Of a stretch of 64,000 nt of DNA, positions 1 to 37,239 are shown piece by piece (the first letter of the stretch is position 1; every line of letters starts with the position of its first letter). The position numbers and the translations under genes were made by a program. Below the pieces are notes generated by a model. It saw only the letters and a list, made by a program, of their open reading frames with translations, did not search any database and was not told the DNA's origin. This DNA comes from Macrostomum hystrix (lineage: Eukaryota > Animalia > Platyhelminthes): positions 2,604,001-2,668,000 of the forward strand of contig CATNEN010000029.1 in NCBI GenBank assembly GCA_950097015.1, in the 5' to 3' direction.

Positions 1-388
1 AACGAGTCCCGATTGTTCAATAAGTCCCAGTTTTAGCGAGTCCCGATTGTTCAATGAATCCCAGTTTTAGCGAGTCCCGATTGTTTAATAAGTCCCAGTT
101 TTAACGAGTCCCGATTGTTCAATAAGTCCCAGTTTTAGCGAGTCCCGATTGTTCAATGAATCCCAGTTTTAGCGAGTCCCGATTGTTTAATGTATCCCAG
201 TTTTAGCGAGTCCCAATTGTTCAATGAATCCCACTTTTTTTATCGAGTCCCAATTGTTCAATGAATCCCAGTTTTAGCGAGTCCCGATTGGTCAATGAAT
301 CCCAGTTTTAGCGAGTCCCGATTGTTCAATGAATCCCAGTTTTAGCGAGTCCCAATTGGTCAATGAATCCCAGTTTTAGCGAGTCCCG
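1..388. repeat. 34-bp minisatellite (AGCGAGTCCCGATTGTTCAATGAATCCCAGTTTT), ~11 copies, runs off the window start
   Basis: Tandem units read directly. Confidence 0.95.
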
Positions 389-814
389 ATTGGTATTGCA
401 TGCGCACACGTTTATTGAGTTTTTTTACACGACCTTAATTTCTCTGTATTCCATGTCGATTCATTATTGCCCTTATTTTGGGATTTTATTATCGTTCTTG
501 CTGTTGCTATCATGCATACAAGTATTTACAATGCGATTGTTAAACGGAAAGTCGTTTACTGTCATTGTAAAATAACAAATGTGCAAATTTAGTGACTGAT
601 TTATAAAATAAATAAATGTCTGACGAACTGTCGTCGGGTGATTGTGTGGTAAATATTTTAGTAGATTGTAAACTCTCTGCTGCTGTTTGCATTTTCATGA
701 TTTAGTTGTTTCAATTTAGAATATTCTGTGGGAATTAGTGAACTGACACGCTTTCAACCAGACGAACAGCTAGTGGTACAGCCGCAAAACTCATGAAAAC
801 GCATTCCAAATGTT

Positions 815-1888: not shown

Positions 1889-4800
1889 CTAGTAAGTTTT
1901 CTGCCGGGTCACCTGTCCAGAATGTGAGCCGTGGTGGGCCGGCATGTCGTGCGCATCTTCTATAGCGTTACGACGAAGAAAGTACTTGCAGTAGATGAGC
2001 ACGCCAGCGCCGATAAGTAGGCCGGCGCCGACAGCTGAGAATACCGCGATCAGCACAATGGCCAGCGTGTCCAAGCCAACGCCTCCAGTGCCTGGGTCAA
2101 CGGTTGACGTAGGCGGCGTGGTAGAAGGAACTATCGGTGCAGATGTTGTATCAACGTCGGGCGAAGGATTTGTCGGTCCAGTTGACAGGGTTGACCCGGT
2201 CGAGTCAGTCACGGGAGGACGAATGGTAGAAGTAGACTCACCAGTCACCTGTGTGGGAGTGGAATCGGCCTGTGAGTCAGTGGAAGTCCGCGTTGTCGGG
2301 GAGGTCGTCGGTGTTGTCTCTGTCGGGGTAGTCATTGTCGTTGTCATCGGCGGGTCCAGCTGGCTGATGCAATGGGGCGAGTCGATGCACGGAAGCGCCT
2401 GGTCCCAGAAGGCGCAGTTCTGTCCGCGGTAGACGTCCTCGACGTATCGCAGGGGCGACGTGGCGTTGTCGCCGTCTCCGGGGTCCCGCAGCAGCAGCAC
2501 TCGTTGACTGGCAGCGTCGTATGCCTCCCAGCGCGGACTGCCGTTCTCAGCGAAATCCAGCAGGTTGCGGACCAGGAAGGCCGATAGCTGGGCGGGCACC
2601 TCGCCGAGTGGCTTCGCAGGACCGGCGGGCCGGCCCATGAGGATGTGGGCGTCGTCGACTGCAGGACGGGGTGGTCAGGAGGAGCGGTCAACTAATAAAA
2701 CAGAATGAAGCCAGTGATGGCTGGTGAGTGAGGCCAGTGATGGCTGGTGAGTGAGAGCACCCCTACACAAAAGGCAGTCACAAGCAGCTCAGCTCACACA
2801 GAGTGGCTCCAATCAGGGGGTCGCCACTCGGTGGGGCCTCAGCGGGCGCAGCCAGCAGGAAGCCGAACACGGGCTCGGGCTGCTGGCGAGCGCTGGCAGC
2901 TGCCATGAACTTCCAGGACGGGCAGCTGAAGTGTCGGTCGCCCAGCGCCTGCGCCAGCAGCCGAGCGTCGCTGCCGACACCAGGACTACCAGCACCCGGG
3001 TCCGGGAACCTGGCGAACCGGTTGGCAGCCGCCTGCAGGCCGACGGGCGACAGCGACTCGGCGAAGCGGGGGAAGTGGCGAAGAGAGTCGGCCAGGAGCT
3101 GAGCGGGCGGAATGAGCGGCTGAGATGCAGATGCGGAAGATACACAACACAACAGCGTCAAGGAACAGAGGTACACAGGTACACAGGTACACAAGCGCAC
3201 AGGTACACAAGCACACAGATACACAAGCACACAGGTACACAAGCACACAGATACACAAGCACACAGGTACACAAGCGCACAGGTACACAGGTACACAGGT
3301 ACACAAGCGCACAGGTACACAGGTACATAAGCACACAGATACACAAGCACACAGGTAAACAAGCACACAGATACACAAGCACATAGATACACAAGCACAC
3401 AGGTACACAAGCGCACAGGCACACAGGTACACAAGCACACAGGTTCACAAGCACACAGGTACACAAGTACACAGGTACACAAGTACACAGGTTCACAAGC
3501 ACACAGGTACACAAGCGCACAGATACACAAGCGCACAGGTACACAGAAAACCTCATACAGAGCACACTCTACTCACTGTCTGCAGCTCGTCACGAGTCAT
3601 ATTCTGCAGCTGCTGGCTGCTGAGCAGCATTCGGAGCAGGGCGTTGCCAGGCGCCGCCACACCGCCCAGCAACAGCGGAGGCAGCGGAGGCAGCGAGTCG
3701 GTGGCCCAGGGTTCCGAGTTCAGGAAGTCATTGTCCAAGACCGGCCCGAAGGCGATGAACGGTGCAGGGAGTCGAGCCTCGTTTAGCTGGAACTCGGCGG
3801 CTGCGCTGACGATGTCGGAGACGTTAAGGGCTTGCAGGCAGGCCAGCAAGGACTTCGTGGACCCGAAGGTGTTGCATTGCAGCGAGGCGGCTGCGGGAGA
3901 GGCGCGAGACAAGATTTAGGGCTGCAGTGCACTGCTTATCCCCTGATGATTTTCACATCCTCCAATCCCAGTCACGAGTCAGCTGCTCCCAGTACCAATA
4001 TGCTGATTCCCTGATGCAAATGCTTACATACTAATTCCCTAATCCCTATCTGCATGTCCCATCCCCACATTCCTATCTTTATATCCCATACCCACATCCC
4101 TATCTGCATATCTCATCCCCACATCCCTATCTGCATATCTCCACATCCTTATCTGCATATCCCACATCCATCATCCCTATCTGCGTATCCCATCCCTCAT
4201 CCCTATCTGCATATCCCATCCCCACATCCCTATCTGCATGTCCCATCCCCACATCCCTATCTGCATGTCCCATCCCCACATCCCTATCTGCATGTCCCAT
4301 CCCCACATCCCTATCTGCATATCCCAATTCCCACATCCCTACCTGCATACCCCATACCCACATCCCTATCTGCATATACCAATCCCATGTAAAACACCCA
4401 GCTCCTGGCTGAGCTGAGCACACCTGTGAAGTTCGAGTGCAGCTGCTGGACGCTGTCTGTTCTGGGCGATACCAGGTAAGGCATGTTGGGCGACCCTGAC
4501 AGCAGCACAGCTCGCTGGAATTGTGACTTCCCAGCCAGAAGGTGGAAGCCGACCGAGGCGGCGCCCGACTCCACGCCGATCAGGGTGACCTTCGAGGAGG
4601 AGCCGCCGAAACTGCGGATGTTTCTTCCGCTCACCCACTCAATGACCATGGCCTGGTCTCTCAGTCCCAGGTTTGCACTCACAACGCCCGGAATCCAAAG
4701 GAAGCCGAGCGGTCCTGCGGGCCACATTTTCGGTTGTGATTTCGAGAGCTACTACTAACAGTAGTGCTGATAGAGCACTGATCTCATACTAGATAATTTT

Positions 4801-7800
4801 AATAAATAATATTTATTCATAAAGAGACTGGCACAGGTAAGAAAGTAGATAGACTGACTGACACAGATGGGTAACACAGGAGAGTAACAGGGGGGAAGAG
4901 ACAGTAACAGGTTAGGGAGAAACAGTAACAGGTGGAGAAGGGACAGTAAGAGGTGGGGAAGAGACAGTAACAGGTGGGGAAGAGACAGTAACAGGTTGGG
5001 GAGAGACAGTAACAGGTGGGGAAAGAGACGGTACCTAATGGGGAAGAGACAGTAACAGATGGGGAAAGAGAAAATAACAGGTGGGGAAGAGACAGTAACA
5101 TGTAAGAGTCGCACCCAGTCGGTAGGCAGCCGTGACCACCACTGCATCACCGAAGTCCAGCACGTGGCTGCCTCGCCAGCGGTCGTCTGCAGCGTCGCCA
5201 GCCTCGAAGAAGCCACCGTGCAGAAAGAGCAGCACTGGCAGGTTCGTCACAGTGACTTCAGCAGTCGCGGGCGTCCACAGGTTCATGTAGAGGCAGTCCT
5301 CCGAGGTGTCGAGGACTTGCCCGGACGACGGATGTCCGAACTGGACGCAGGCGGGCTTCGGACTGATGGCCACGTAGGTCTGAGGAGAAGCTGCGGCGTG
5401 AGAGCACAGTTGAAGCACAGTGAGAACACAGTTTAAGCACAGTTTGAGCACAGTTGAAACACAGTTGAAGCACAGTTTGAGCACAGTTGAAGCACAGTGA
5501 GAACACAGTTGAAGCACAGTTTGAGCACAGTTGAAGCACAGTGAGAACACAGTTGAAGCACAGTGAGAACACAGTTGAAGCACAGTTTGAGCACAGTTGA
5601 AGCACAGTGAGAACACAGTTTAAGCACAGTTTGAGCACAGTTGAAACACAGTTTGAGCACAGTTTGAGCACAGTTGAAGCACAGTGAGAACACAGTTTAA
5701 GCACAGTTTGAGCACAGTTGAAACACAGTTTGAGCACAGTTTGAGCACAGTTGAAACACAGTTTGAGCACAGTTGAAGCACAGTTTGTGCACAGTTGAAG
5801 CGCGCTTTGAGCACATTGAGAACTAATTTAAGCACAGTTTGAGCACAGACCAGACAGCATGGTTAGAGAACAGTGAAAACACAGTAAGACAATAGTGAGC
5901 ACACAGTAAGAACAAGGTGAGAACGCAGTGAGAACAGAGTGAGCACACAGTGAGAACATTATAAGATACCAAAAGAGCTCAGATCATAGAGTCAGATTCA
6001 CCAAAGTGCAGCAGCTTGAGCTGAACTCACGGAGTACATCCAGTTTTTCTGGTGGTTTGAATCGCCGGTCTCCGATTGGCGGCTTTGCGTAGGGCAGGCC
6101 GAGAAACTGCGACATCACTTTGCCAGCAGGTGTCCTGATTGTCTGTCCAATTGTATCTCCGTAGCCAATCACATTGATTGAAAAGTTTCGCAGCACCGTG
6201 TTAGACACGGGCTTCGGCAACGACCAGTGCTGCTGCTGCTGCTGCTGCTGTGGCATTGTCCTGGAAGTTTTCGTTTCCAGCGCCGGCCGTGGCGTTGCGG
6301 GGCCGGACAGAGCGTTGGCCAGCGGCATCTCAGCGGTCCAGAGCGGGCAGCGTCCGGGCTCGAATGCGAAGCCACCGGTTGACAGCTTGGCGGAGTTGTT
6401 GGCATTCGACTCAGCGCTGAAGCGCATGAACTCGGAGATGGAGACACTGCTGGCCGACCAGTCAGCACCGGGCACTGCGGGATCGGATTTAAGGCTGGGA
6501 AATCCAACTGTCACTCCCGCACCTCAGCTGTCACTCACGCACCTCAACTGTCACTCACGCACCTCAGCTGTCACTTCCTCACCTCAGCTGTCACTCCCGC
6601 ACCTCAGGTGTCACTTCCTCACCTCAGCTGTCAGTCCCGCACCTCAGCTGTCACTCCCGCACCTCAGCTGTCACTCACGCACCTCAGCTGTCAGTCCCGC
6701 ACCTCAGCTGTCAGTCCCGCACCTCAGCTGTCAGTCCCGCACCTCAGCTGTCAGTCCCGCACCTCAACTGTCACTCACGCACCTCAGCTGTCACTTCCTC
6801 ACCTCAGCTGTCACTCCCACACCTCATCTGTCACTCACGCACCTCAGCTGTCAGTCCCACACCTCAGCTGTCGTTCCGAATTCTTCAATCTCAGTGGTTT
6901 CGCACAGCACTTGTCACTGTCACCTGGCACCAAGTAACCGAAATTCGCAAGCCTACCGCCAGCAGTCACGAAGGCGGCCAGGTGCCGTGACATCAGTCGA
7001 GCCAGACTCCTGTGCTCTGCCGGATAGTTCGGACGCAGCAGCGGCTCCCCTAGCAGGTAGGCCACGTCTGTCGCCGCCTTCTCTGGCTCAGTCGGGTCGA
7101 TGTCCAAGTCGAGCAGGTACATGAAAACCTCCGCTCCGCCACTGCTCAGCAGCTCGCTGGTGGCGAGCCATGCTGGACAGGCCACCCCGAAGTCGGACAG
7201 CGCTCGCGCCAGCGTCGACTGGACGGAGGCTCCGAAGGCAGCGTGTGGCCAGTCGGACAGGGCCACGCGGAGGAACCGCCGACCGGAGATTGACGTGCCT
7301 CCGCCTTCAGCGTGCAGGCGGGGAAACTGCCCGAGCTCTCTGTCCAGCATCTAGGAATGAACGGCAGGTGATGGGGATGAGAACTCTGTCCAGCATCTGG
7401 GAATGAACGGCAGGTGATGGGGATAAGGACTCTGTCCAGCATCTGGGAATGAACGGCAGGTGATGGGGATGAGAACTCTGTCCAGCATCTGGGAAAGAAC
7501 GGCAGGTGATGGGGATGAGAACTCTGTCCAGCATCTGGGAATGAACGGCAGGTGATGGGGATGAGAAATATGTCCAGCATCTGGGATGAGGATGGTGATG
7601 ATGAGGATGAGGATGCAGGTTATCGGGATAATCTAAGAAACTCACAGCCTCGAAGTCGGTCTTGTTGACGCTGTCCCAGTCGACTCGTCCCAGAAGTCGC
7701 AGCGCGCGCTTCGCCAGCGCCAAGCCAGCGCCCGAGCTGGCCCCGATCAGAAGCGAGCCGTTGAAGCCACCCCCGCGCCAGCGCGCGTCCGGCAGCTTCT

Positions 7801-8752
7801 CCGAGGCGTTGAAGCTCGGTGCGAATCGACCTGTGCCGTTGACATCGTCGCGAAGCAGCGCTGCCTCAGCGTCCAGCAGCGATTGCAGCGACTGTTGGCG
7901 GAGGCATTCTAGTGACAGCCGACTCCCTTCGGCGACGCAGCCGAGACTCTCAGCGAACCGGAGGTCGAGCTCGGCGGCCACCTCGCTGGAAGCTGACCAG
8001 GCCATCGGTGCTTTGATCGAGCCGCTCATCATGATGACGCGCGAGAAGCCCGGACTGTCCCCGACGACGCCGATCGAGTGTAGGCCGACAGCTCCGGCGG
8101 CGGACGGTCCGTGGCCAGCCAGCGAGACCCGGCTCGGGTCGCCGCCGAATACGCCGATCGCCTCTCGTAGGAACCGCAGCGCCAGGCGCTGGTCGAGCAG
8201 GCCCGCGTTCAGGCCGGCCGGCAGGTTGCCAAGGACGCCTGTCCGGCTGCCGACCGTCGCCAGGACGACTCCGCTGGCTGCGCCGTCGATTCCGGCGGCC
8301 AACGCGTCGCCGTCCTCGTGGCCCACGATTTCGTCGTCGAAGTCGGTGGAGCCTCCGAGCAGCAGCGCCAGCACCGGCCGCTGGCCTGAGAGGTCCGGAG
8401 TTCGAATGCTCACGCGGAGAAGCAGATCCTCAATTAATGAGCCGCCTGGCTCGTCTCCGGTGGCGTTTAGCTTGCAGTCTGGCTGATCGAACTCGGTAAA
8501 CGGCTCCGGCGCGGCGAAGCGCCTCAACCCGACCGGCGCCTCCGCGTACGGCACGCGCAGAAAGCGAAACAGCGGCCTCTCCTCACCGCTGATCGTCACG
8601 TTCAGCTCGGAGCCCACGATGGTGCAGTTGCGAATTTTCACCTTGACCTCTCCAATCACCTGCCGCTGAGCCTCCGCCAACATCGGCGACAGGGCGACGG
8701 CTACGGCGACAGAGACGGCCGCAACAACAGTGACTACGGCAACGCCAGTCAT
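1889..8752 (-). CDS. Tandem double cholinesterase-like (non-catalytic, neuroligin/CLAM-like) type I membrane protein, short-tail copy; 8 exons 8752-7646, 7350-6957, 6474-6031, 5390-5115, 4714-4424, 3890-3577, 3119-2798, 2658-1889; ~1305 aa
   Basis: Signal peptide MTGVAVV...AEA. Two carboxylesterase folds ([16 protein letters not shown] / [37 protein letters not shown] / [13 protein letters not shown] / CAFW). All seven introns are GT-AG with matching phases and the summed length (3918 nt) is divisible by 3. Thr/Ser stalk, TM helix, ~30-aa tail ending RQKTY. Confidence 0.88.
3165..3546. repeat. GTACACAAGCACACAG-type minisatellite in intron 6 of the minus copy
   Basis: Tandem 8/16-bp units; source of the LCACV/HTGTQ ORFs. 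Confidence 0.95.
4025..4386. repeat. CCCACATCCCTATCTGCATAT-type minisatellite in intron 5 of the minus copy
   Basis: Tandem units seen directly. Confidence 0.9.
4880..5100. repeat. ~21-bp AACAGGTGGGGAAGAGACAGT minisatellite in intron 4 of the minus copy
   Basis: Tandem units seen directly. Confidence 0.9.
5403..5850. repeat. 11-bp GCACAGTTTGA-type minisatellite in intron 3 of the minus copy
   Basis: Tandem units seen directly. Confidence 0.95.
6508..6875. repeat. 20-bp GCACCTCAGCTGTCACTCAC minisatellite in intron 2 of the minus copy
   Basis: Tandem units seen directly. Confidence 0.95.
7337..7620. repeat. 46-bp minisatellite spanning the intron 1/exon 2 junction of the minus copy (6 acceptor copies)
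   Basis: YAG|ATGCTGGAC recurs at 7580, 7534, 7488, 7442, 7396, 7350. Confidence 0.92.
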
Positions 8753-9382
8753 CGAGATCTGCTGAGATCTGATTGGTCAGTCCGACCTGCGCTCTGTGCT
8801 TGTCCGCAGTGCGGATGTGAGTCCGATTTCAGTGACGGTAACGCCCTGTTTATGCTTTTGCACCACCCTGTCTTGCGAATTCTGGCTAATTCTGGCTATT
8901 TTCTGGCATCCTACGCCTTGCAGGAACCGCCTACTTTTTTCTCTTCTTAGTCCCTAAGCCCAGATAAGATTATATCCCTATGCTGGCTGGTCAGGCTTTT
9001 AGTTCGGGGGGCTAATCGTTGACTAGAAATGCAAACCTGATTCTTGTGCACACCGGCGCTTGTGTGTTATATCGCAGTAGGCTGAGATTTCTGAGTAGCA
9101 GATAACACAGCAACAGTACTTGTTGGTGCAATAGTTCTGCTGATATTCGCCATGCCCAGTGTACGAATGTGCATGCAGTTTTAGATCTGCACAGCGATAG
9201 ACAGGGACCATGCTATTTGCGGATATTATTGCTAAATTTCGAATACTGCCGTGTCTCCTAGCAACCAAAAAGTAAACAGTGGCAATTTTTTCCGTCTTTT
9301 TTGTGCATTTTCTTTGGGGTTCATTTTTTCAAAGAAAGAATATTCTAAAAATGCTATTTTATGTTTTAGTGGCACTTATTAA

Positions 9383-9930
9383 AAACCCGTCAGAATCCTT
9401 CAGATCCTTCACAAACCCGTCAGAATCCTTCATTTCCTTCACAAACCCGTCAGAATCCTTCAGGTCCTTCACAAACCCGTCAGAATCCTTCAGGTCCATC
9501 ACAAACCCGTCAGAATCCTTCAGGTCCTTCACAAACCCGTCAGAATCCTTCAGGTCCTTCACAAACCCGTCAGAATCCTTCAGGTCCTTCACAAACCCGT
9601 CAGAATCCTTCATTTCCTTCACAAACCCGTCAGAATCCTTCATTTCCTTCACAAACCCGTCAGAATCCTTCAGTTCCTTCACAAAACCGTCAGAATCCTT
9701 CAGGTCCTTCACAAACTCACCATAATCCTTCAGGTCCTTCACAAACCCTTCAGGTCTTTCACAAACCCGTCAGGTCTTTCACAAATCCGTCAGAATCCTT
9801 CAGGTCCTTCACAAACCCATCAGGTCCTTCACAAACCCGTCAGAATCCTTCAGGTCTTTCCTAAACTCACCAGAATCCTTCAGGTACTTCTCAAACCCGT
9901 CAGAATCCTACAAGTCCTTCATAAGCCACC
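9383..9930. repeat. 30-bp minisatellite (AAACCCGTCAGAATCCTTCAGGTCCTTCAC) in the palindrome spacer
   Basis: Tandem units, degenerating towards 9930. Confidence 0.95.
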
Positions 9931-10478
9931 TAAAATCCTTTAGGTTTTGGTCTCTGAAAATACTACTTTAGGTAGGCTGTGCAGCAGTTCAGCATTAAAA
10001 CTCCATGTGTGACTCAATGGCATTCGGCGCACACATCGAAAAAGAAAGATATAATAAGAGTCGCCATAAAACTCAGTCGCAAGCTCCGCGACGGGAAGCT
10101 ATACAGGACCACGGTTTGGCTCAGCGGCCTGAGTTGTTGGCCTTATCTACTCACAAATTAAGCCGAAGCTAGTTTCAACACTCAGCAAAGCACAAGCAGG
10201 TCGCCTTCATGACAGATTTCTCCACACACTGAGCAGCATTTAGGCGTAATCTAATCAGCAGAGCAACCGGGGAAAACAGCAGGCAAGCAGTGTTGCGGGA
10301 GGTCGGAATCGAATGCAAAATAATAAATAGCGTTCAAAGGGAGTGTTTTCAGAAAAATTATTTAAGGCTGGACTTGTGCGAACAGGGCGTTACCGTCACC
10401 GAAATCGGACTCACATCCGCACTGCGGACAAGCACAGAGCGCAGGTCGGACTGACCAATCAGATCTCAGCAGATCTCG

Positions 10479-13400
10479 ATGACTGGCGTTGCCGTAGTCA
10501 CTGTTGTTGCGGCCGTCTCTGTCGCCGTAGCCGTCGCCCTGTCGCCGATGTTGGCGGAGGCTCAGCGGCAGGTGATTGGAGAGGTCAAGGTGAAAATTCG
10601 CAACTGCACCATCGTGGGCTCCGAGCTGAACGTGACGATCAGCGGTGAGGAGAGGCCGCTGTTTCGCTTTCTGCGCGTGCCGTACGCGGAGGCGCCGGTC
10701 GGGTTGAGGCGCTTCGCCGCGCCGGAGCCGTTTACCGAGTTCGATCAGCCAGACTGCAAGCTAAACGCCACCGGAGACGAGCCAGGCGGCTCATTAATTG
10801 AGGATCTGCTTCTCCGCGTGAGCATTCGAACTCCGGACCTCTCAGGCCAGCGGCCGGTGCTGGCGCTGCTGCTCGGAGGCTCCACCGACTTCGACGACGA
10901 AATCGTGGGCCACGAGGACGGCGACGCGTTGGCCGCCGGAATCGACGGCGCAGCCAGCGGAGTCATCCTGGCGACGGTCGGCAGCCGGACAGGCGTCCTT
11001 GGCAACCTGCCGGCCGGCCTGAACGCGGGCCTGCTCGACCAGCGCCTGGCGCTGCGGTTCCTACGAGAGGCGATCGGCGTATTCGGCGGCGACCCGAGCC
11101 GGGTCTCGCTGGCTGGCCACGGACCGTCCGCCGCCGGAGCTGTCGGCCTACACTCGATCGGCGTCGTCGGGGACGCCGGGGACAGTCCGGGCTTCTCGCG
11201 CGTCATCATGATGAGCGGCTCGATCAAGGCACCGATGGCCTGGTCAGCTTCCAGCGAGGTGGCCGCCGAGCTCGACCTCCGGTTCGCTGAGAGTCTCGGC
11301 TGCGTCGCCGAAGGGAGTCGGCTGTCACTAGAATGCCTCCGCCAACAGTCGCTGCAATCGCTGCTGGACGCTGAGGCAGCGCTGCTTCGCGACGATGTCA
11401 ACGGCACAGGTCGATTCGCACCGAGCTTCAACGCCTCGGAGAAGCTGCCGGACGCGCGCTGGCGCGGGGGTGGCTTCAATGGCTCGCTTCTGATCGGGGC
11501 CAGCTCGGGCGCTGGCTTGGCGCTGGCGAAGCGCGCGCTGCGACTTCTGGGACGAGTCGACTGGGGCAGCGTCAACAAGACCGACTTCGAGGCTGTGAGT
11601 TTCTTAGATTATCCCGATAACCTGCATCCTCATCCTCATCATCTGCATCACAGAATCCTCATCCCAATCACCTGCCGTTCATTCCCAGATGCTGGACAGA
11701 GTTCTCATCCCCATCACCTGCCGTTCATTCCCAGATGCTGGACAGAGTTCTCATCCCCATCACCTGCCGTTCATTCCCAGATGCTGGACAGAGTTCTCAT
11801 CCCCATCACCTGCCGTTCATTCCCAGATGCTGGACAGAGTTCTCATCCCCATCACCTGCCGTTCATTCCCAGATGCTGGACAGAGTCCTTATCCCCATCA
11901 CCTGCCGTTCATTCCCAGATGCTGGACAGAGTTCTCATCCCCATCACCTGCCGTTCATTCCCAGATGCTGGACAGAGAGCTCGGGCAGTTTCCCCGCCTG
12001 CACGCTGAAGGCGGAGGCACGTCAATCTCCGGTCGGCGGTTCCTCCGCGTGGCCCTGTCCGACTGGCCACACGCTGCCTTCGGAGCCTCCGTCCAGTCGA
12101 CGCTGGCGCGAGCGCTGTCCGACTTCGGGGTGGCCTGTCCAGCATGGCTCGCCACCAGCGAGCTGCTGAGCAGTGGCGGAGCGGAGGTTTTCATGTACCT
12201 GCTCGACTTGGACATCGACCCGACTGAGCCAGAGAAGGCGGCGACAGACGTGGCCTACCTGCTAGGGGAGCCGCTGCTGCGTCCGAACTATCCGGCAGAG
12301 CACAGGAGTCTGGCTCGACTGATGTCACGGCACCTGGCCGCCTTCGTGACTGCTGGCGGTAGGCTTGCGAATTTCGGTTACTTGGTGCCAGGTGACAGTG
12401 ACAAGTGCTGTGCGAAACCACTGAGATTGAAGAATTCGGAACGACAGCTGAGGTGTGGGACTGACAGCTGAGGTGCGTGAGTGACAGATGAGGTGTGGGA
12501 GTGACAGCTGAGGTGAGGAAGTGACAGCTGAGGTGCGTGAGTGACAGTTGAGGTGCGGGACTGACAGCTGAGGTGCGGGACTGACAGCTGAGGTGCGGGA
12601 CTGACAGCTGAGGTGCGTGAGTGACAGTTGAGGTGCGTGAGTGACAGCTGAGGTGCGGGAGTGACACCTGAAGTGCGTGAGTGACAGCTGAAGTGCAGAA
12701 GCGACAGCTGAGGTGCGTGAGTGACGGCTGAGGTGCGTGAGTGACAGCTGAGGTGCGTGAGTGACAGCTGAGGTGCGGGAGTGACAGTTGGATTTCCCAG
12801 CCCCAAATCCGATCCCGCAGTGCCCGGTGCTGACTGGTCGGCCAGCAGTGTCTCCAGCTCCGAGTTCATGCGCTTCAGCGCTGAGTCGAATGCCAACAAC
12901 TCCGCCAAGCTGTCAAACGGTGGCTTCGCCTTCGAGCCCGGCCGCTGCCCGCTCTGGACCGCCGAGATGCCGCTGGCCAACGCTCTGTCCGGCCCCGCAA
13001 CGCTACGGCCGGCGCTGGAAACGAAAACTTCCAGGACAATGCCACAGCAGCAGCAGCAGCAGCAGCACTGGTCGTTGCCGAAGCCCGTGTCTAACACGGT
13101 GCTGCGAAACTTTTCAATCAATGTGATTGGCTACGGAGATACAATTGGACAGACAATCAGGACACCTGCTGGCAAAGTGATGTCGCAGTTTCTCGGCCTG
13201 CCCTACGCAAAGCCGCCAATCGGAGACCGGCGATTCAAACCACCAGAAAAACTGGATGTACTCCGTGAGTTCAGCTCAAGCTGCTGCACTTTGGTGAATC
13301 TGACTCTATGATCTGAGCTCTTTTGGTATCTTATAATGTTCTCACTGTGTGCTCACTCTGTTCTCACTGCGTTCTCACCTTGTTCTTACTGTGTGCTCAC

Positions 13401-16400
13401 TATTGTCTTACTGTGTTTTCACTGTTCTCTAACCGTGCTCTCTGGTCTGTGCTCAAACTGTGCTTAAATTAGTTCTCAATGTGCTCAAAGCGTGCTTCAA
13501 CTGTGCACAAACTGTGCTTCAACTGTGCTCAAACTGTGCTTAAACTGTGCTCAAACTGTGCTCAAACTGTGCTTAAACTGTACTCAAACTGTGCTTAAAC
13601 TGTGTTCTCACTGTGCCTCAACTGTGCTCTCACGCCGCAGCTTCTCCTCAGACCTACGTGGTCATCAGTCCGAAGCCCGCCTGCGTCCAGTTCGGACATC
13701 CGTCGTCCGGGCAAGTCCTCGACACCTCGGAGGACTGCCTCTACATGAACCTGTGGACGCCCGCGACTTCTGAAGTCACTGTGACCAACCTGCCAGTGCT
13801 GCTCTTTCTGCACGGTGGCTTCTTCGAGGCTGGCGACGCTGCAGACGACCGCTGGCGAGGCAGCCACGTGCTGGACTTCGGTGATGCAGTGGTGGTCACG
13901 GCTGCCTACCGACTGGGTGCGACTCTTACATGTTACTGTCTCTTTCCCCATCTGTTACTGTCTCTTCCCCATTAGGTACTGTCTCTTTCCCCACCTGTTA
14001 CTGTCTCTCCCCAACCTGTTACTGTCTCGTCCCCCCACCTGTTACTGTCTCTTCCCCACCTCTTACTGTCCCTTCTCCACCTGTTACTGTTTCTCCCTAA
14101 CCTGTTACTGTCTCTTCTCCCCTGTTACTCTCCTGTGTTACCCATCTGTGTCAGTCAGTCTATCTACTTTCTTACCTGTGGCAGTCTCTTTATGAATAAA
14201 TAATTTTTATGCTCTATAGTGCTCTATCAGCACTACTGTTAGTAGCAGCTCTCGAAATCACAACCGAAAATGTGGCCCGCAGGACCGCTCGGCTTCCTTT
14301 GGATTCCGGGCGTTGTGAGTGCAAACCTGGGACTGAGAGACCAGGCCATGGTCATTGAGTGGGTGAGCGGAAGAAACATCCGCAGGTTCGGCGGCTCCTC
14401 CTCGAAGGTCACCCTGATCGGCGTGGAGTCGGGCGCCGCCTCGGTCGGCTTCCACCTTCTGGCTGGGAAGTCACAATTCCAGCGAGCTGTGCTGCTGTCA
14501 GGGTCGCCCAACACGCCTTACCTGGTATCGCCCAGAACAGACAGCGTCCAGCAGCTGCACTCGAACTTCACAGGTGTGCTCAGCTCAGCCAGGAGCTGGG
14601 TGTTTTACATAGGATTGGTATATGCAGATAGGGATGTGGGGATGGGATATGCAGGTAGGGATGTGGGAATTGGGATATGCAGATAGGGATGAGGGGATGG
14701 GATATGCAGATAGGGATGTGGGGATGGGACATGCAGATAGGGATGTGGGGATGGGATATGCAGATAGGGATGTGGGGATTGGATACGCAGATAGTGATGT
14801 GGGGATGGGACATGCAGATAGGGATGTGGGTATGGGATATGCAGATAGGGATGAGAGGATGGGATATGCAGATAATGATGTGGAGATATGCAGATAGGGA
14901 TGAGGGGATGGGATATGCAGATAGGGATGTGGGGATGGGACATGCAGATAGGGATGTGGGGATGGGATATGCAGATAGGGATGTGGGGATTGGATACGCA
15001 GATAGTGATGTGGGGATGGGACATGCAGATAGGGATGTGGGTATGGGATTGCAGATAGGGATGAGAGGATGGGATATGCAGATAATGATGTGGAGATATG
15101 CAGATAGGGATGTGGGGATGAGATATGCAGATAGGGATGTGGGGATGGGACATGCAGATAGGGATGTGGGGATGGGATATGCAGATAGGTATGTAGGGAT
15201 TGGAATGTAAAACGTTTGCATCATAGAATCAGGATCTTGGTATTGTGAGTTGCTGACTCGTGACTGGGATTGGAGGATGTGAAAATCATCAGGGGATAAG
15301 CAGTGCACTGCAGCCCTGAATCTTGTCTCGCGCCTCTCCCGCAGCCGCCTCGCTGCAATGCAATACCTTCGGGTCCACGAAGTCCTTGCTGGCCTGCCTG
15401 CAAGCCCTTAACGTCTCAGACATCGTCAGCGCAGCCGCCGAGTTCCAGCGAAACGAGGCTCGACTCCCTGCACCGTTCATCGCCTTCGGGCCGGTCTTGG
15501 ACAATGACTTCCTGAACTCGGAACCCTGGGCCACCGACTCGCTGCCTCCGCTGCCTCCGCTGTTGCTGGGCGGTGTGGCGGCGCCTGGCAACGCCCTGCT
15601 CCGAATGCTGCTCAGCAGCCAGCAGCTGCAGAATATGACTCGTGACGAGCTGCAGACAGTGAGTAGAGTGTGCTCTGTATGAGGTTTTCTGTGTACCTGT
15701 GCGCTTGTGTACCTGTGTGCTTGTGAACCTGTGTGCTTGTGTACCTGTGCGCTTGTGTACCTGTGTGCTTGTGAACCTGTGTGCTTGTGTACCTGTGCGC
15801 TTGTGTACCTGTGTGCTTGTGAACCTGTGCGCTTGTGTATCTGTGCGCTTATGTACCTCTGTGCTTGTGAACCTGTGTACTTGTGTACCTGTGTGCTTGT
15901 GTACCTGCGTGCTTGTGTACCTGTGTGCCTGTGCGCTTGTGTACCTGTGTACTTGTGAACCTGTGTACTTGTGAACCTGTGTACTTGTGTATCTGTGTGC
16001 TTGTGTATCTGTGTGCTTGTGTACCTGTGTGCTTGTGTATCTGTGTGCTTGTGTATCTGTGTGCTTGTGTACCTGCGTGCTTGTGTACCTGTGTATCTGT
16101 GTGCTTGTGTATCTGTGTGCTTGTGTATCTGTGCGCTTGTGTATCTGTGTGCTTGTGAACCTGTGTGCTTGTGAACCTGTGTGCTTGTGTATCTGTGTGC
16201 TTGTGTATCTGTGTGCTTGTGTACCTGTGTGCTTGTGTACCTGCGTGCTTGTGTACCTGTGTGCCTGTGCGCTTGTGTACCTGTGTACTTGTGTACCTGT
16301 GTGCTTGTGAACCTGTGTACTTGTGTATCTGTGTGCTTGTGTATCTGTGTGCTTGTGTACCTGTGTGCTTGTGTATCTGTGTGCTTGTGAACCTGTGTGC

Positions 16401-18589
16401 TTGTGAACCTGTGTGCTTGTGTATCTGTGTGCTTGTGTATCTGTGTGCTTGTGTACCTGTGTGCTTGTGTACCTGCGTGCTTGTGTACCTGTGTATCTGT
16501 GTGCTTGTGTATCTGTGTGCTTGTGTACCTGTGTGCTTGTGTACCTGCGTGCTTGTGTACCTGTGTATCTGTGTGCTTGTGTATCTGTGTGCTTGTGTAT
16601 CTGTGCGCTTGTGTATCTGTGCGCTAATGTACCTATGTGCTTGTGAACCTGTGTGCTTGTGTGCTTGTGAACCTGTGTGCTTGTGAACCTGTGTGCTTGT
16701 GTGCTTGTGAACCTGTGTGCTTGTTTACATGTGTACCTGTGTGCTTGTGTATCTGTGCGCTTGTGCACCTGTGTGCCCGTGTAAGTGTGTTCCTGTTTGT
16801 TTGTACGCCTGTGTGCTTGAGTCACAGTGTACCTGTGTACCTCTGTTCCTTGACGCTGTTGTGTTGTGTATCTTCCGCATCTGCATCTCAGCCGCTCATT
16901 CCGCCCGCTCAGCTCCTGGCCGACTCTCTTCGCCACTTCCCCCGCTTCGCCGAGTCGCTGTCGCCCGTCGGCCTGCAGGCGGCTGCCAACCGGTTCGCCA
17001 GGTTCCCGGACCCGGGTGCTGGTAGTCCTGGTGTCGGCAGCGACGCTCGGCTGCTGGCGCAGGCGCTGGGCGACCGACACTTCAGCTGCCCGTCCTGGAA
17101 GTTCATGGCAGCTGCCAGCGCTCGCCAGCAGCCCGAGCCCGTGTTCGGCTTCCTGCTGGCTGCGCCCGCTGAGGCCCCACCGAGTGGCGACCCCCTGATT
17201 GGAGCCACTCTGTGTGAGCTGAGCTGCTTGTGACTGCCTTTTGTGTAGGGGTGCTCTCACTCACCAGCCATCACTGGCCTCACTCACCAGTCATCACTGG
17301 CCTCACTCACCAGTCATCACTGGCCTCACTCACCAGCCATCACTGGCCTCACTCACCAGTCATCACTGGCCTCACTCACCAGTCATCACTGGCCTCACTC
17401 ACCAGCCATCACTGGCCTCACTCACCAGCCATCACTGGCCTCACTCACCAGCCATCACTGGCCTCACTCACCAGCCATCACTGGCCTCACTCACCAGCCA
17501 TCACTGGCCTCACTCACCAGCCATCACTGGCTTCATTCAGTTTTATTAGTTGACCGCTCCTCCTGACCACTCCGTCCTGCAGTCGACGACGCCCACATCC
17601 TCATGGGCCGGCCCGCCGGTCCTGCGAAGCCACTCGGCGAGGTGCCCGCCCAGCTATCGGCCTTCCTGGTCCGCAGCCTGCTGGATTTCGCTGAGAACGG
17701 CAGTCCGCGCTGGGAGGCATACGACGCTGCCAGTCAACGAGTGCTGCTGCTGCGGGATCCCGGAGACGGCGACAACGCCACATCGCCCCTGCGATACGTC
17801 GAGGACGTCTACCGCGGACAGAACTGCGCCTTCTGGGACCAGGCGCTTCCGTGCATCGACTCGCCCCATTGCATCAGCCAGCTGGACCCGCCGATGACAA
17901 CGACAATGACTACCCCGACAGAGACAACACCGACGACCTCCCCGACTTCCACTGACTCACAGGCCGATTCCACTCCCACACAGGTGACTGGTGAGTCTAC
18001 TTCTACCATTCGTCCTCCCGTGACTGACTCGACCGGGTCAACCCTGTCAACTGGACCGACAAATCCTTCGCCCGACGTTGATACAACATCTGCACCGATA
18101 GTTCCTTCCACCACGCCGCCTACGTCAACCGTTGACCCAGGCACTGGAGGCGGTGGCTTGGACATGCTGGCCATTGTGCTCATTGTGGTCTTCTCAATTG
18201 TTGGAGTGGCTCTTCTGATTGGTGGCGGATTCCTGATCTATCGATTCTACAGTAGAAGCCCGTCCAGAGGAGACACTGACCTACCAGAGCGATACCCTAG
18301 TCGAACCCAGAATCAGCAGCAGCAGCAGCAGCAGAACAATAAACCGCTTGACCGGGCCGTGGATCAAGAACCACCTCAGGCGGCGTCCAATAGGCAACGA
18401 AGTGGCGCCGACAGCGCTGACCAACGTCCAGCCAATAAAACAACTGTCCAGCCAGGAAAGCAAGAATCCACTGCCGTTGGCGCAGCGATTTATGGGTCAC
18501 TCGCTGATCAGCAGCAGCAGCAGCACACTGCTTCAGTGGATGGTGTCAATAATGAGGGCTTTTCAAGTGTTGAGGAAAGTAAAATGTAG
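10479..18589 (+). CDS. Tandem double cholinesterase-like (non-catalytic, neuroligin/CLAM-like) type I membrane protein, long-tail copy; 8 exons 10479-11594, 11965-12358, 12821-13264, 13641-13916, 14283-14573, 15345-15658, 16892-17213, 17583-18589; ~1387 aa
   Basis: Same motifs as the minus copy; phases 0,1,1,1,1,0,1 are consistent and the total is 4164 nt. Nucleophile elbows GHGPS and GVESG lack the catalytic Ser. TM helix followed by a ~115-aa tail ending EESKM. An alternative exon 3 acceptor at 12788 is in the same phase but lacks a pyrimidine tract. Confidence 0.88.
11650..11977. repeat. 46-bp minisatellite spanning the intron 1/exon 2 junction of the plus copy (7 acceptor copies)
   Basis: CCCAG|ATGCTGGACAGAG at 11689, 11735, 11781, 11827, 11873, 11919, 11965. 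Confidence 0.92.
12445..12787. repeat. 20-bp GTGACAGCTGAGGTGCGTGA minisatellite, intron 2 of the plus copy
   Basis: Tandem units. Confidence 0.95.
13490..13630. repeat. 11-bp AAACTGTGCTC minisatellite, intron 3 of the plus copy
   Basis: Tandem units; much shorter than in the left arm. Confidence 0.9.
13930..14135. repeat. ~21-bp ACCTGTTACTGTCTCTTCCCC minisatellite, intron 4 of the plus copy
   Basis: Tandem units. Confidence 0.9.
14618..15205. repeat. ATATGCAGATAGGGATGTGGGGATGGG minisatellite, intron 5 of the plus copy
   Basis: Tandem units with an internal block duplication. Confidence 0.95.
15690..16835. repeat. CTGTGTGCTTGTGTAC-type minisatellite, intron 6 of the plus copy (~1.1 kb)
   Basis: Tandem units. 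Confidence 0.95.
17255..17530. repeat. 20-bp CACTCACCAGCCATCACTGG-type minisatellite, intron 7 of the plus copy
   Basis: ~13-14 copies versus ~2.5 in the left arm (2706-2756). Confidence 0.95.
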
Positions 18590-23527: not shown

Positions 23528-24846
23528 ATGACAACGCCGAACTCCGGTGCCGGCAGTCGGCGAGGCTCCGGAGGAGGCGGCACTCGCACGCCTGGCAGGG
23601 GAGCCGGCGGCTCCGGTGATGGCAGCCAGCGGGGCTCGCCGGGTCTGAGCGCCACTGCCAGCTGCCTGCGCTGGGCGGAGTGTCCGCAGAATCTGCTTGA
23701 CGATCCTGAAGGCGTCCTACTACTGAAGCAATTCATGGAGGACATGAATCCTTCGCATGCGCGCGCTTTCGACTTCTACTTTGCCGTGAAAGGTTTAAAA
23801 AGCGGCTGTCAGCAGCCGCAGCAGCATCAGCTAATTCGCCTTATCAATAGAAAGTACGTCAGCAGAGACGACTGCGTGCCGATCAGCGCCGCAGTTCGCG
23901 CCGCCATTCAGGCCAGGGTGCGCGCCGGAGACACAGATCCTTGCCTGTTTGACCCGGCTCTGGATGAAGTTGTTCATTTTCTCACAGATACAGTCTATCC
24001 GGCCTTTCTAAAGTCCGACTTGTATATAAACTATCTGGCCTGCGTTGGTAGCGGCGCCACCTGGCAACCCTGTCTAGCCGGGGTCGAACTCGCGACCAAC
24101 AATTCGACAGCAGCCGGCGCCTCATGTTCGCCAGCTGTGCACACTCCGCGCAGCCTGCCAACTGTGCATGAGGATCGAGAATTGCAACAGCAGCTGACTG
24201 CGGCAGTCGCAGCGGCAGCTGGGTCCAGAGCCGGGTCGGTGCCTCGATCCCGCTCATCGCCGGCGCCCGCCACCACTGGAGCGGCTGCAGCAACAGCGGC
24301 CCGGCCGGTGCTTGACTTGACCATTAAGAATCTGTACGCTACTCGGTTTCAAAGGGGACGCGCGTCTCTACCTGAGTTTGCAGGCGGCCCACAGACTGGG
24401 TGAGTATGGGGTCATTGCAGCTGATAGACAGGGAGTCTATGCTGACAGGCAGGGAGTCTATGCTGACAGGCAGGGAGTCTATGCTGACAGGCAGGGAGTC
24501 TATGCTGACAGGCAGGGAGTTTCAGCTGACATACAGACCGTACACTCCACCTGTTACCTTTGCCGGTTGTCATAGAAACCGACTCAGGTGAAGACATTTT
24601 AAGCTACTCTATTGATGAGTAAAACAGTTCAAATACAGAGGTTAAGTAAAATTTTGCACCTGTAAAATTCTATATTGTCTTCTCGTACTGGACATGTCCT
24701 CCTTTTCAGTCTAGATTTTTTCATGTCGTTTTAATTATAGGAAAAATTGCGTTGTTAAAGAAAATTGTCAGCGTGTTTAACTTTTGGAATGTCTGGCTTT
24801 TTCTCTTTCTTCTTTTCCGCTTGCTTTGCCGCCGCCGCCGCCTCTG

Positions 24847-29487: not shown

Positions 29488-31679
29488 GCTTTAGCTGACT
29501 ATGTTTGATTGCAGAAATAGCGTTTCTTGCTATTCACAACTACACAAAATGCCTTTTGAATAGTCGGAATTTCCTAAATTTGTAATCATTTGTATGTCGT
29601 GGTGTTGCACATTTTTCCGCCGCTAAGTCACCAAACTCAGCCTTACTATTTTTATGTGTTCTCATAGTTTTGAAAGCATTGCATCGAAATATAAAATCTT
29701 GGAAACTCAATGGTGCCTTTGTCTGCTAGCGTCGCTGTTATTTATTTATTTAAATTCACAAACTTACCTTACTGCATGAGTAGGTTGTAATCCTATTAGA
29801 AAAGGCAGGAAGGCTGGCTCAATATAGCTTGCTTGTAATTTCTGCTTTTAATATTCATAATATCTAGTTTCCTGTCATTTTTATTGTATTTTTACGCAAC
29901 ACTAGCTTCATTGATAGGAACTTATATATTTAAAACTGTATTTTGTGACACGTAGTACATTCAGTGTACATCTATCTGGCCTTCACTGCTTGCTAATGAT
30001 AGCTATGCACAGTAGTTTTGACACAGTTTTTAAGCAAAAACGAATTGTCACTGTACAGCGTGTACCGTGTAAATAAACTTTTTTGCCTCGGACGCTGTTC
30101 TTTTAATTTTTTCGTTTTCACTTTAACTTTATAATCACGCAGGCACGTACAAACCGTTTGTACAGTTGTTTTTTTTATATTTAATTCCCTGTTTGAGTGC
30201 ATCTAAATACAACTTTTTCTACTGATCTTTACACTAAATAAGCGGAAGCAAGCAAATAGTCACAACTAGCTTTGCCTTCAGTTTGTTAAATATTTTATTG
30301 CGTCATTAGTCTCATGCAAATTAAATTCTGACGAGAATAACGAGAATAACGAGAATTCGCTTTCTAAATATTTTATACATATTCTCGTCTGCATCACAAT
30401 ACATATAATTTACTTTGAAGTAATTGATAGGTTTCAGAAAATTTCACATGCACTTTTACATCCGCGGTTTGAAACTAAAAGCTGAAAATGCATTCTTGCT
30501 CATTGCATGGTTATGATGTAATGTACGAGTACTTGAATTCGATTTTCAATATCGATCAAATTGGTGAAATTTCTTGCATACTTGCGTTGATCACATACTT
30601 TCTATCGAGCTCTCATTAACGAATATATTCGAAAACTAGTATATCTTCCTGTTTGGAACTTATTAAACATAAGTTCTATTCAAAGAGCTTTTCGTCAGCA
30701 AAACGGAAACCACCTCGTGTTAAAACAAAACTTTGCTATTTGTATTAAGCTTGTACAAACTAAAAAATATCTTGGCACATAAAGCTTATTAAAAAAAGTA
30801 TTGATAAACTTCTAGTGTGTTTCTAGCGTTAAAAAATAATTTATTTTTCCTTAGCTCCATTTAAGCTTGGCTTGTAGATTTTTTAATTTAAGAATAAACC
30901 AATTTATTTTTACTTGCTTGCTGCATTTGTACGACTTCTCTTACTCGACAAATATTAGCCCACAATGAATGCTTTTTCGGCATAAGTAAATATGCATTGA
31001 AACCGGTGAAAACGTTAGATTTAAATGCAACAGTCTTTATATATTTTTTGTGCATTATTACGTTCTTTGCCTCCATGTTTGAAGCTTTTCATAGATATTT
31101 TTTAATAACAAATAAATAAATTTGGTACTATGAAAATAAAAAATATTTATTTGTCTATAGGTGTTAGTTAAAATTAAAAGCAACACAATATCAATAAGTT
31201 CAATTCCTTTTTACAGCGCGTTTAACTTATTTTATTTTATAAATATTTCAAGACATCAAGTTTATATTTAATTTAAAAAGCTTTTTATCAGTTGGAGACA
31301 TGAAAAGAAAAATCGCAAAAAATTATTCTACACAAACTTTTAATGACCAGTCATGATTCAAAAAGATTTAATGTCTGTTTCGGATTCAAATAATACAAAG
31401 ATACAACAAAAATATTTTTCTTTCTAACCAAAAAGGTTTGATGCTTTTTTCATTTAGTTTTTACATTAACAGTAACACATGTACTTTAATAAATTTTGTA
31501 GACGAGTAGAAACCCTGAAATATACATGAATTATTTTCTTTCGATTTCTCTTTTTCCTTCAAATAGAGAATCGCACTATTTACTATCTAATGCGCAAAAT
31601 GAGGAATTCGTCCATCAATTTGCACCCGCAGCAGAACGGAGCTCTGGCAGCCGCGACCCAACACTGCTCACCATCAGGA

Positions 31680-34707
<3,028 letters not shown>

Positions 34708-36032: not shown

Positions 36033-36435
36033 CCAATTTTAAAAAATTTAAAATATTTTTTTATTTAGCTGCGGAGTACATGGCTCGCCATTATAATTCA
36101 GATTTTTAAGCAGGTATTCTATAGTTTTTAGCATGTCAGTCAATTTTGTTGGCCAATTTAGTTTTTTTTTCAATTTGGTAATGCTTCCTTAATAGACGAA
36201 CAAAGAATCTGCTGATTTTCTACATTCTTTTTTCGAACTTTTTAAATTTTATTAAGTATCTAAGTAATTTTCTTGTCACAACTCTGCACATTCACTCATG
36301 CAAGTATAACAAATATAATATCGTATTTAACTGAACAGCTCCTGTGTCTGAACTTCAACGGCGAGGAGTCTTTGTCCAGTAAATATTTCAGTTCTTTATT
36401 GTGCTTCTCAGAAATGATTTCGTATATCTGTAGGT

Positions 36436-37211: not shown

Positions 37212-37239
37212 CTGTAGGTTCTCGAGAACAGTTACAGTA

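What the first reader, a model, noticed from the sequence alone, without database searches (positions are those of the whole stretch)
18160..18241. Sharp homogenisation boundary at the start of the TM helix: old paralogs, young identity
Seen: the arms are near-identical up to ...GCC ATT GTG CT (18180 / 2052). Over the next 21 codons (18179-18241 vs 2053-1991) the proteins are still homologous (LIVVFSIVGVALLIGGGFLIY vs [21 protein letters not shown], 15/21 identical), but 12 of those 15 conserved codons differ synonymously. A simple recent duplication would leave no homologous, saturated TM beyond its breakpoint. Inference: the duplication is ancient, and everything 5' of the TM, introns included, has been overwritten by arm-to-arm gene conversion (as in Y-chromosome palindromes) or by one recent replacement. 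Selection may stop the tract at the point where the tails must stay different.
Basis: partly seen in the sequence, partly recalled or inferred. Interest (0 to 1): 0.78.

Follow-up and report, generated by a model that had tools for sequence, protein, structure and literature searches.

The report
Old gene pair, freshly homogenised front
Two old, back-to-back flatworm genes for a membrane protein have recently copied each other's outer part, introns included, up to the membrane anchor, while anchors and inner tails stayed different; this is a clean example of a well-known process.

Summary
The inverted arms (2052-8850 minus strand, 10381-18180 plus strand) differ at 0.84% of clean aligned positions. 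The last shared base is 18180/2052.

In the next 21 codons:
- 15 residues are identical, against 3.0 expected for composition-matched shuffles (P about 6e-9).
- 12 of those 15 codons differ silently.
- Third codon positions match at 5 of 21, which is random, and pS is 0.82.

Beyond the membrane anchor (TM) no homology is detectable. No third locus in the genome carries either TM or tail.

Macrostomum lignano also has two such genes on one contig, with ectodomains about 97% identical and different TMs and tails.
- Ectodomains group by species: 99% and 97% within, 55-62% between.
- Tails group by type: long tail with long tail p=0.001, short with short p=0.006.
- The TM alone does not resolve either grouping.

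So the pair is old, and its 5' part was homogenised separately in each lineage, most likely by gene conversion between the inverted copies.

I could not test whether selection sets the boundary. In M. lignano the boundary lies about 60-150 codons further upstream, but it also spares the TM and tail.

This is a new member of a known kind: partial concerted evolution, as in mammalian paired receptors and palindrome arms. The window is a flatworm contig, not human. The same scan had already noted a gene-conversion palindrome elsewhere in this genome.

The parts
10381..18180 (+). Right arm of the inverted repeat. It runs from 98 nt upstream of the ATG of gene A to the fourth or fifth residue of the TM helix.
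   Evidence: Inverted-repeat search and global alignment. Clean columns show 35 mismatches in 4186.
2052..8850 (-). Left arm of the inverted repeat, holding gene B from 98 nt upstream of its ATG to the TM start.
   Evidence: The arms differ mainly in copy number of intronic tandem repeats.
8851..10380 (.). Unique spacer between the two gene heads. It contains a 30-nt tandem repeat at 9383-9921 and has no inverted symmetry of its own.
   Evidence: no inverted self-hits.
10479..18589 (+). Gene A, about 8 exons: two cholinesterase-fold (COesterase) domains in tandem, a Thr/Pro-rich stalk, a TM helix and a 115-residue Gln-rich tail. Approximate coding blocks: 10479-11600, 11965-12360, 12823-13270, 13649-13921, 14282-14575, 15386-15652, 16910-17218, 17585-18589.
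   Evidence: Pfam hits exon by exon. Local tblastn of the M. lignano protein P0005 against the window.
1889..8752 (-). Gene B, with the same exon plan, a TM helix and a 33-residue tail. Approximate coding blocks: 8752-7640, 7350-6958, 6472-6026, 5382-5110, 4715-4425, 3849-3583, 3101-2793, 2656-1889.
   Evidence: Coding differences from gene A are 26 substitutions and two in-frame 9-nt indels, with no stop or frameshift.
18109..18180 (+). Frayed edge of the homogenised tract: 3 mismatches in the last 72 nt (18109, 18153, 18165).
18181..18241 (+). Unconverted, anciently homologous rest of the TM helix of gene A. The helix as a whole spans about 18167-18241.
1991..2051 (-). Unconverted, anciently homologous rest of the TM helix of gene B. 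The helix as a whole spans about 2065-1991.
18242..18589 (+). Cytoplasmic tail A, the long Gln-rich type. It is alignable with the tail of M. lignano P0005.
   Evidence: It is unique in the genome.
1889..1990 (-). Cytoplasmic tail B, the short type. It is alignable with the tail of M. lignano P0020.
   Evidence: It is unique in the genome.

Best explanation
Genes A and B are old paralogues. The duplication is at least about as old as the split between this species (probably Macrostomum hystrix) and M. lignano. Both encode a type I membrane protein with two cholinesterase-fold domains, a mucin-like stalk, a conserved TM helix and a copy-specific tail.

In this lineage the two genes lie head to head, 1.5 kb apart. 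The whole stretch from 98 nt upstream of the start codon to the start of the TM helix, exons and introns alike, has been made alike by non-reciprocal copying between the inverted arms (intrachromosomal gene conversion). The last such event was recent, because the arms differ by only 0.84%.

The TM and tail lie outside the tract. They have kept diverging until silent sites are random, while purifying selection kept 15 of 21 TM residues.

Shown: the step in divergence, the homology of the TM beyond it, grouping of ectodomains by species, grouping of tails by type, and the absence of any third donor locus.

Inferred: the mechanism (conversion rather than another replacement process); that it recurs; and that the edge stays stable because sequence that has once diverged can no longer pair, possibly helped by selection for different tails.
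For: - Boundary and saturation: pS is 0.82 and pN 0.17 in the 21 codons past 18180. In the arms' coding sequence there are 11 silent and 15 replacement differences over about 4 kb.
- TM homology: 15/21 against 3.0 expected, P=6e-9. The C12 paralogue control reaches 6/21.
- Introns are homogenised too, at 99-100% in unique intronic stretches.
- The M. lignano pair P0005/P0020 sits on one contig. It is 92-96% identical in DNA, introns included, from about 250 nt upstream of the ATG to the middle of the stalk, and diverges after that.
- Ectodomains group by species.
- Tails group by type.
- A and MA are syntenic: both lie upstream of, and in the same orientation as, a Sel1-like gene and a Cu/Zn SOD gene.
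- Neither TM/tail has another copy in the 220-Mb genome at DNA or protein level.
- Mismatches along the arms are overdispersed (p=6e-4) and denser at the outer edge (P=0.03). This fits several tracts of different age.
- The tight palindrome (1.5-kb spacer) is more alike (99.2%) than the M. lignano pair 30 kb apart (92-96%), as expected if conversion falls with distance.
Against: - The TM alone gives no by-type signal (4/3/1 informative sites).
- The tail orthology rests on short, low-complexity sequences (p=0.001 and 0.006).
- B and MB lie in different places and orientations: head to head next to A here, convergent and 30 kb downstream in M. lignano. At least two rearrangements, or two independent duplications, are needed.
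- Part of the overdispersion comes from a mismatch cluster next to a tandem repeat (15233-15251), which may be misalignment.
- No population or third-species data were available, so ongoing conversion is not shown.
Confidence: 0.8

Rival explanations
1. One single recent replacement in this lineage. A long conversion tract or a replication template switch between the two old inverted paralogues overwrote about 7 kb once, with its outer junction in the microhomology at the TM start. There would be no ongoing arm-to-arm exchange.
For: The arms differ by 0.84%, not by the 0.03% or less typical of actively converting palindromes. One event explains the sharp step as well as many events do.
Against: The same kind of homogenisation, with a different boundary and a different age (4-8% divergence), occurred separately in M. 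lignano, so the process recurs at least across lineages. Mismatch density is uneven along the arms and raised at the edge. A single tract through introns that had long since diverged would have had no homology to run through.
Confidence: 0.13
2. A recent whole-gene inverted duplication, after which one copy had its 3' end (TM plus tail) replaced from a third, older paralogue.
For: It would also give identical 5' parts and a homologous but diverged TM.
Against: No other locus in the genome matches either TM/tail at DNA or protein level. The nearest other paralogue has an unrelated TM, 6/21. M. lignano has the same two tail types, so both tails predate the recent identity.
Confidence: 0.04
3. 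Assembly or polishing artefact. The palindrome, or its high identity, was produced by fold-back reads or by short-read polishing across two more divergent copies.
For: Palindromes are a known failure mode of long-read assembly. No reads were available to check.
Against: The locus lies 2.6 Mb inside a contig. The arms carry 35 clean substitutions, two in-frame indels and very different repeat copy numbers, for example 24.8 versus 70.9 copies of a 16-mer. They end in two different, intact 3' ends, each with a counterpart in M. lignano.
Confidence: 0.02
4. The TM similarity past the boundary is chance or convergence of two unrelated hydrophobic helices, so the boundary is simply the breakpoint of a recent partial duplication.
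For: TM helices share composition. Only 21 codons are involved.
Against: 15/21 in a fixed register, against 3.0 expected and a maximum of 11 in 200,000 shuffles. The same motif is kept in M. lignano. Matches are 19/21 and 16/21 at codon positions 1 and 2 and random at position 3. The genome-wide protein search returns the partner TM as the only significant hit, E=9e-7.
Confidence: 0.01

Closest known systems
Merohomogenization of paired leukocyte receptors (KLRC/NKG2, KLRB, Ly49, PIR; Fossum et al. 2011, PMC3210942). Similar cases are Siglec-11/16 (PMC5701461) and CEACAM pairs (PMC2832619, PMC7042247).
   Same: Two neighbouring paralogues share a ligand-side domain kept nearly identical by homogenisation after speciation. 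The membrane and cytoplasmic parts stay different and are conserved by type between species. The ectodomain tree groups by species and the tail grouping is by type.
   Different: The fold is a double cholinesterase-like domain, not Ig or C-type lectin, and the host is a flatworm. I found no charged TM residue and no ITIM or ITAM consensus in either tail by reading the sequences, so opposing signalling is not shown. The ligand is unknown. Here the tract covers whole introns and the proximal promoter, about 7 kb.
Arm-to-arm gene conversion in large palindromes (primate Y and X ampliconic palindromes; from my own knowledge of Rozen et al. 2003).
   Same: Inverted arms around a short unique spacer. 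Arm identity is far above the age of the duplication. The outer boundary is sharp and similarity collapses beyond it.
   Different: The arms are 7-8 kb, not tens to hundreds of kb. Identity is 99.2% rather than about 99.97%. The arms hold one gene each, and that gene continues past the arm end into a copy-specific 3' end. In M. lignano the related pair is not a tight palindrome at all: it is convergent and 30 kb apart.
Cholinesterase-like adhesion molecules (neuroligin, neurotactin, gliotactin; Pfam PF00135 COesterase).
   Same: An extracellular COesterase fold, a stalk, a single TM helix and a cytoplasmic tail. The esterase active-site motif is degenerate.
   Different: There are two COesterase domains in tandem in one chain. 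There is no neuroligin-type C-terminal PDZ ligand. The nearest relatives are only Macrostomum proteins.

Membership tests
Partial concerted evolution of a paired-receptor gene pair (merohomogenization) | In one part of the gene, paralogues within a species are more alike than orthologues between species. | tested here: met
   Exon 1 is 98.7% identical for A versus B and 55-56% against M. lignano. The pre-stalk part of the last exon is 99% versus 60-62%. The tree is ((A,B),(MA,MB)). The M. lignano pair is about 97% identical.
Partial concerted evolution of a paired-receptor gene pair (merohomogenization) | The remaining part (TM and tail) groups by receptor type across species. | tested here: inconclusive
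   Tails meet it: A-MA z=3.79, p=0.001; B-MB z=3.06, p=0.006; cross pairs at or below z=1.85. The TM is unresolved, with 4/3/1 informative sites, although A-MA silent divergence (0.55) is below A-B (0.82).
Partial concerted evolution of a paired-receptor gene pair (merohomogenization) | The partners carry opposing signalling features: an ITIM-type tail versus a charged TM residue or an adaptor-binding short tail. | tested here: not met
   Direct reading of the TMs and tails shows no Lys, Arg, Asp or Glu inside either TM and no [ILVS]xYxx[LVI] consensus. Only the long-versus-short tail contrast is present.
Partial concerted evolution of a paired-receptor gene pair (merohomogenization) | Both partners bind the same ligand. 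| not testable with these tools
   The ligand is unknown. This needs binding assays.
Palindrome maintained by arm-to-arm gene conversion | Inverted arms flank a short unique spacer. | tested here: met
   Arms at 2052-8850 and 10381-18180. The spacer is 1530 nt with no inverted symmetry.
Palindrome maintained by arm-to-arm gene conversion | Arm divergence is far below the divergence expected from the age of the duplication. | tested here: met
   0.84% in the arms against saturated silent sites immediately outside. The duplication is at least as old as the split from M. lignano.
Palindrome maintained by arm-to-arm gene conversion | Conversion is ongoing: polymorphisms shared between arms, or tracts that vary among individuals. 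| not testable with these tools
   No population data. The only hints are overdispersed mismatches and a frayed edge.
Pfam PF00135 COesterase / cholinesterase-like membrane proteins | A significant match to the COesterase profile. | tested here: met
   Exon 1 scores E=2.5e-37, covering profile positions 4-287. Later exons cover a second domain, profile positions 9-339.
Pfam PF00135 COesterase / cholinesterase-like membrane proteins | A catalytic GESAG-type serine motif, which would mark an active esterase. | tested here: inconclusive
   Domain 1 reads GHGPSAAG. Domain 2 reads GVESGAAS here but GAEAGAAS in M. lignano. This was read by eye only; the other triad residues were not checked.

The most novel reading that the evidence does not exclude
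The pair is a true paired receptor system outside the vertebrate immune system. Two double-cholinesterase-fold receptors must see the same, possibly fast-evolving, ligand but deliver different signals: a long Gln-rich tail versus a short tail. Selection has therefore kept ectodomain homogenisation and tail separation going across the genus Macrostomum. The conversion edge would be held outside the TM and tail by selection rather than by sequence divergence alone.
Probability: 0.25. Interest if true: 0.65.

Novelty: new member of a known kind. Interest (0 to 1): 0.42.

Why it matters
This is an unusually clean natural example of partial concerted evolution. Within one open reading frame, silent divergence jumps from about 1% to saturation at a single base. 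The inference of old paralogues with young identity could be checked against a second species, where the same thing happened independently with a different boundary.

For annotators it is a warning. Near-identical paralogues in Macrostomum genomes need not be recent duplicates, so dating by dS will mislead.

For biology, it points to a conserved two-tail receptor pair with a doubled cholinesterase-like ectodomain in free-living flatworms. Its ligand and signalling are unknown.

The process itself is textbook, so the general significance is modest.

Tried and rejected
- Third-locus donor. DNA and protein searches of the whole genome with each TM/tail found only the two genes themselves. Rejected.
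- Residual homology beyond the TM. Sensitive blastn and tblastx of the outer flanks, and an inverted self-comparison of the spacer, found nothing except the TM.
- BLASTP of each tail alone against the M. lignano fragment P0001 was not significant. Local-alignment z-scores were only marginal. Global alignment with shuffles gave the by-type signal.
- A quartet analysis of the 63-nt TM was inconclusive. In one search I pasted four 87-nt strings printed. I repeated the count from file references, with the same result.
- GC-biased conversion. GC3 is 0.67-0.80 in the homogenised exons against 0.48 in TM-A and tail A, but neighbouring genes have GC3 of 0.61-0.76. No claim is made.
- The look-up of encoding contigs on the UniRef-only fragment P0001 found no record. 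The NCBI proteins P0005 and P0020 worked.
- The word search and the full representative search returned only M. lignano relatives, so no third species could be added.
- Literature searches found no report of this locus or of gene conversion in Macrostomum.
- All protein searches of the window's genes were done exon by exon, by reference.

Full report
**What the window is.** The window is not human. It is G000:C29:2604001-2668000 of a 220,453,370-base assembly in 42 contigs. Earlier notes of this scan call the genome a Macrostomum flatworm. The size and contig number match the Macrostomum hystrix assembly described in the abstract of PMC10468722, about 220 Mb in 42 contigs. The species name is therefore an inference. 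The nearest database relatives of the genes are all from M. lignano.

**Anatomy of the locus.** Bases 2052-8850 and 10381-18180 form an inverted repeat around a 1530-nt spacer. The spacer has no inverted symmetry of its own.

Each arm carries one gene, and the genes lie head to head. Gene B is on the minus strand (ATG at 8752, stop at 1889). Gene A is on the plus strand (ATG at 10479, stop at 18589). Pfam, run exon by exon, finds two COesterase (cholinesterase-fold) domains in tandem. A Thr/Pro-rich stalk, one hydrophobic helix and a cytoplasmic tail follow.

A 1232-residue M. lignano protein, P0005, has the same plan. Aligned locally to the window, it gives eight coding blocks per gene. I built and searched no joined spliced model; every search of the window's genes was by single-exon reference.

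The introns consist largely of tandem repeats, and their copy numbers differ between the arms.

**Checking the observation.**
- The arms are identical through GCC ATT GTG CT. The first difference is at 18181/2051.
- In the next 21 codons, 15 residues are the same. Twelve of those 15 codons differ at the third position.
- Nucleotide matches by codon position are 19/21, 16/21 and 5/21. pS is 0.82, beyond correction, and pN is 0.17.

Inside the arms, 4186 clean aligned columns hold 35 mismatches, or 0.84%. This count leaves out tandem repeats and positions next to gaps. Coding sequence holds 11 silent and 15 replacement differences plus two in-frame 9-nt indels, and no stop or frameshift. Silent divergence therefore jumps about a hundredfold at one base within an uninterrupted reading frame.

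The step is not perfectly clean. Three of the mismatches fall in the last 72 nt of the arm (Poisson P=0.03).

**Is the TM similarity real?**
- Composition-preserving shuffles give 3.0 identities on average and never more than 11 in 200,000 trials. The binomial P for 15 or more is 6e-9.
- The TM of the nearest other paralogue in the genome reaches 6/21 at best. That paralogue lies on contig C12 and is 37-42% identical in the ectodomain.
- A six-frame protein search of the whole genome with the TM and tail of B returns the TM of A as its only other hit (E=9e-7), and the reverse also holds.

After the helix no similarity remains in the tails or flanks.

**The cross-species test.** The profile search over all protein representatives and the cluster look-up found two M. 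lignano proteins on one 498-kb contig: P0005 (here MA) and P0020 (here MB).
- They are about 97% identical through both esterase domains and into the first part of the stalk. From there they diverge, to 42% over the last 96 residues.
- At the DNA level the two loci are 92-96% identical, introns included. The similarity runs from about 250 nt upstream of the ATG to L032:16544 / L033:17476, in the middle of the stalk.
- M. lignano therefore shows the same phenomenon, but with older identity and a boundary about 60 codons (MA) to 150 codons (MB) upstream of the TM.

Ectodomains group by species. Identity is 98.7-99% within this genome, about 97% within M. lignano and 55-62% between them. The exon-1 tree is ((A,B),(MA,MB)), with internal branches of 0.36-0.43 and tips of 0.026 or less.

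Tails group by type. Global alignment against shuffles gives z=3.79 (p=0.001) for the two long Gln-rich tails, A and MA. It gives z=3.06 (p=0.006) for the two short tails, B and MB. All four other pairs, including both within-species pairs, have z of 1.85 or less.

The 63-nt TM does not resolve a quartet: 4, 3 and 1 informative sites. However, A is closer at silent sites to MA (pS 0.55, 12/21 third positions equal) than to its own neighbour B (pS 0.82, 5/21; Fisher p=0.058).

Synteny supports orthology of A and MA. Both lie upstream of, and in the same orientation as, a Sel1-like gene and a Cu/Zn superoxide dismutase gene.

The second copy is placed differently in the two species. B is head to head with A here. 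MB is convergent with MA and 30 kb downstream, and a PHD-CXXC gene has changed sides. This needs at least two rearrangements. Alternatively, the second copies arose separately.

**Interpretation.** The internal evidence alone shows that A and B were already diverged paralogues when their 5' parts became identical. The M. lignano comparison places the duplication at or before the split of the two species. It also shows that homogenisation happened separately in each lineage.

Gene conversion between the inverted copies is the simplest mechanism. It copies introns and the proximal promoter along with exons. It needs no third locus, and none exists. It is expected to be more effective for the tight palindrome here (99.2% identity) than for the pair 30 kb apart in M. 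lignano (92-96%).

Uneven mismatch density along the arms (dispersion p=6e-4) and the frayed outer edge hint at several tracts of different ages. Part of that signal comes from a cluster next to a tandem repeat, so I rate recurrence as likely, not shown.

Selection holding the edge is possible. Both species spare the TM and tail, and the TM is under purifying selection. The differing boundary positions fit equally well with a passive edge, where sequence that once escaped conversion becomes too different to pair.

**Comparison with known systems.** This is the pattern described for mammalian paired receptors as merohomogenization (PMC3210942), and for Siglec-11/16 and CEACAM pairs. It also matches, from my own knowledge, palindrome arms on primate sex chromosomes.

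It differs in fold (a doubled cholinesterase-like domain), in host (a free-living flatworm), and in lacking the hallmarks of opposing signalling: there is no charged TM residue and no ITIM-like motif on direct reading. I found no paper on this locus or on gene conversion in Macrostomum. Another report of this scan describes a conversion-maintained inverted gene pair elsewhere in the same genome.

**Verdict.** It is a new member of a known kind, of moderate interest.

Noticed in passing
window 10479-17880 and 2600-8752; M. lignano P0005, P0020: Each gene encodes two COesterase domains in tandem in one membrane protein. The first domain reads GHGPSAAG at the active-site position. The second reads GVESGAAS here and GAEAGAAS in M. 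lignano. The doubled plan is conserved between the two species.
   Followed up: partly
window 11650-17539 and 3165-7586: Almost every intron is filled by its own tandem repeat, with periods of 11 to 46 nt. Copy numbers differ strongly between the arms, for example 24.8 versus 70.9 copies of a 16-mer and 12.9 versus 22.2 copies of a 27-mer. The unique intron sequence is 99-100% identical.
   Followed up: partly
G000:C14:511000-560000 (L005, L006, L015-L020, L029, L031): A cluster of more distant COesterase paralogues. In two of them, one 479-residue open frame matches first the end and then the start of the esterase fold. This suggests chains with several esterase domains in a row.
   Followed up: no
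window 31600-43900 versus M. lignano NIVC01000640.1:211000-262000 (L032, L033): The local gene order is rearranged between the species. The block A, Sel1-like, Cu/Zn SOD is collinear, but the PHD-CXXC gene and the second esterase gene have swapped sides. The esterase pair is head to head here and convergent in M. lignano.
   Followed up: partly
L032:16132-17010 and L033:17055-18101: Both annotated M. lignano proteins (P0005, and P0007 = the C-terminal fragment of the gene that encodes P0020) skip an in-frame piece of the stalk starting at ...TQ|VT..., although the genome is open through it. This is a possible in-frame intron inside the stalk. The same CAG|GTGACT sequence is present in this window at 17981-17989.
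   Followed up: no
window 3-392, 811-1430, 9383-9921: Tandem repeats of 34, 57 and 30 nt lie downstream of gene B and in the spacer between the two promoters.
   Followed up: no
window 23528-24403, 33838-34557: An RGS-domain open frame lies downstream of gene A, with no counterpart in the 10 kb downstream of the M. lignano gene. There is also a Cys-rich repetitive open frame with weak PMG and defensin-like Pfam hits.
   Followed up: no
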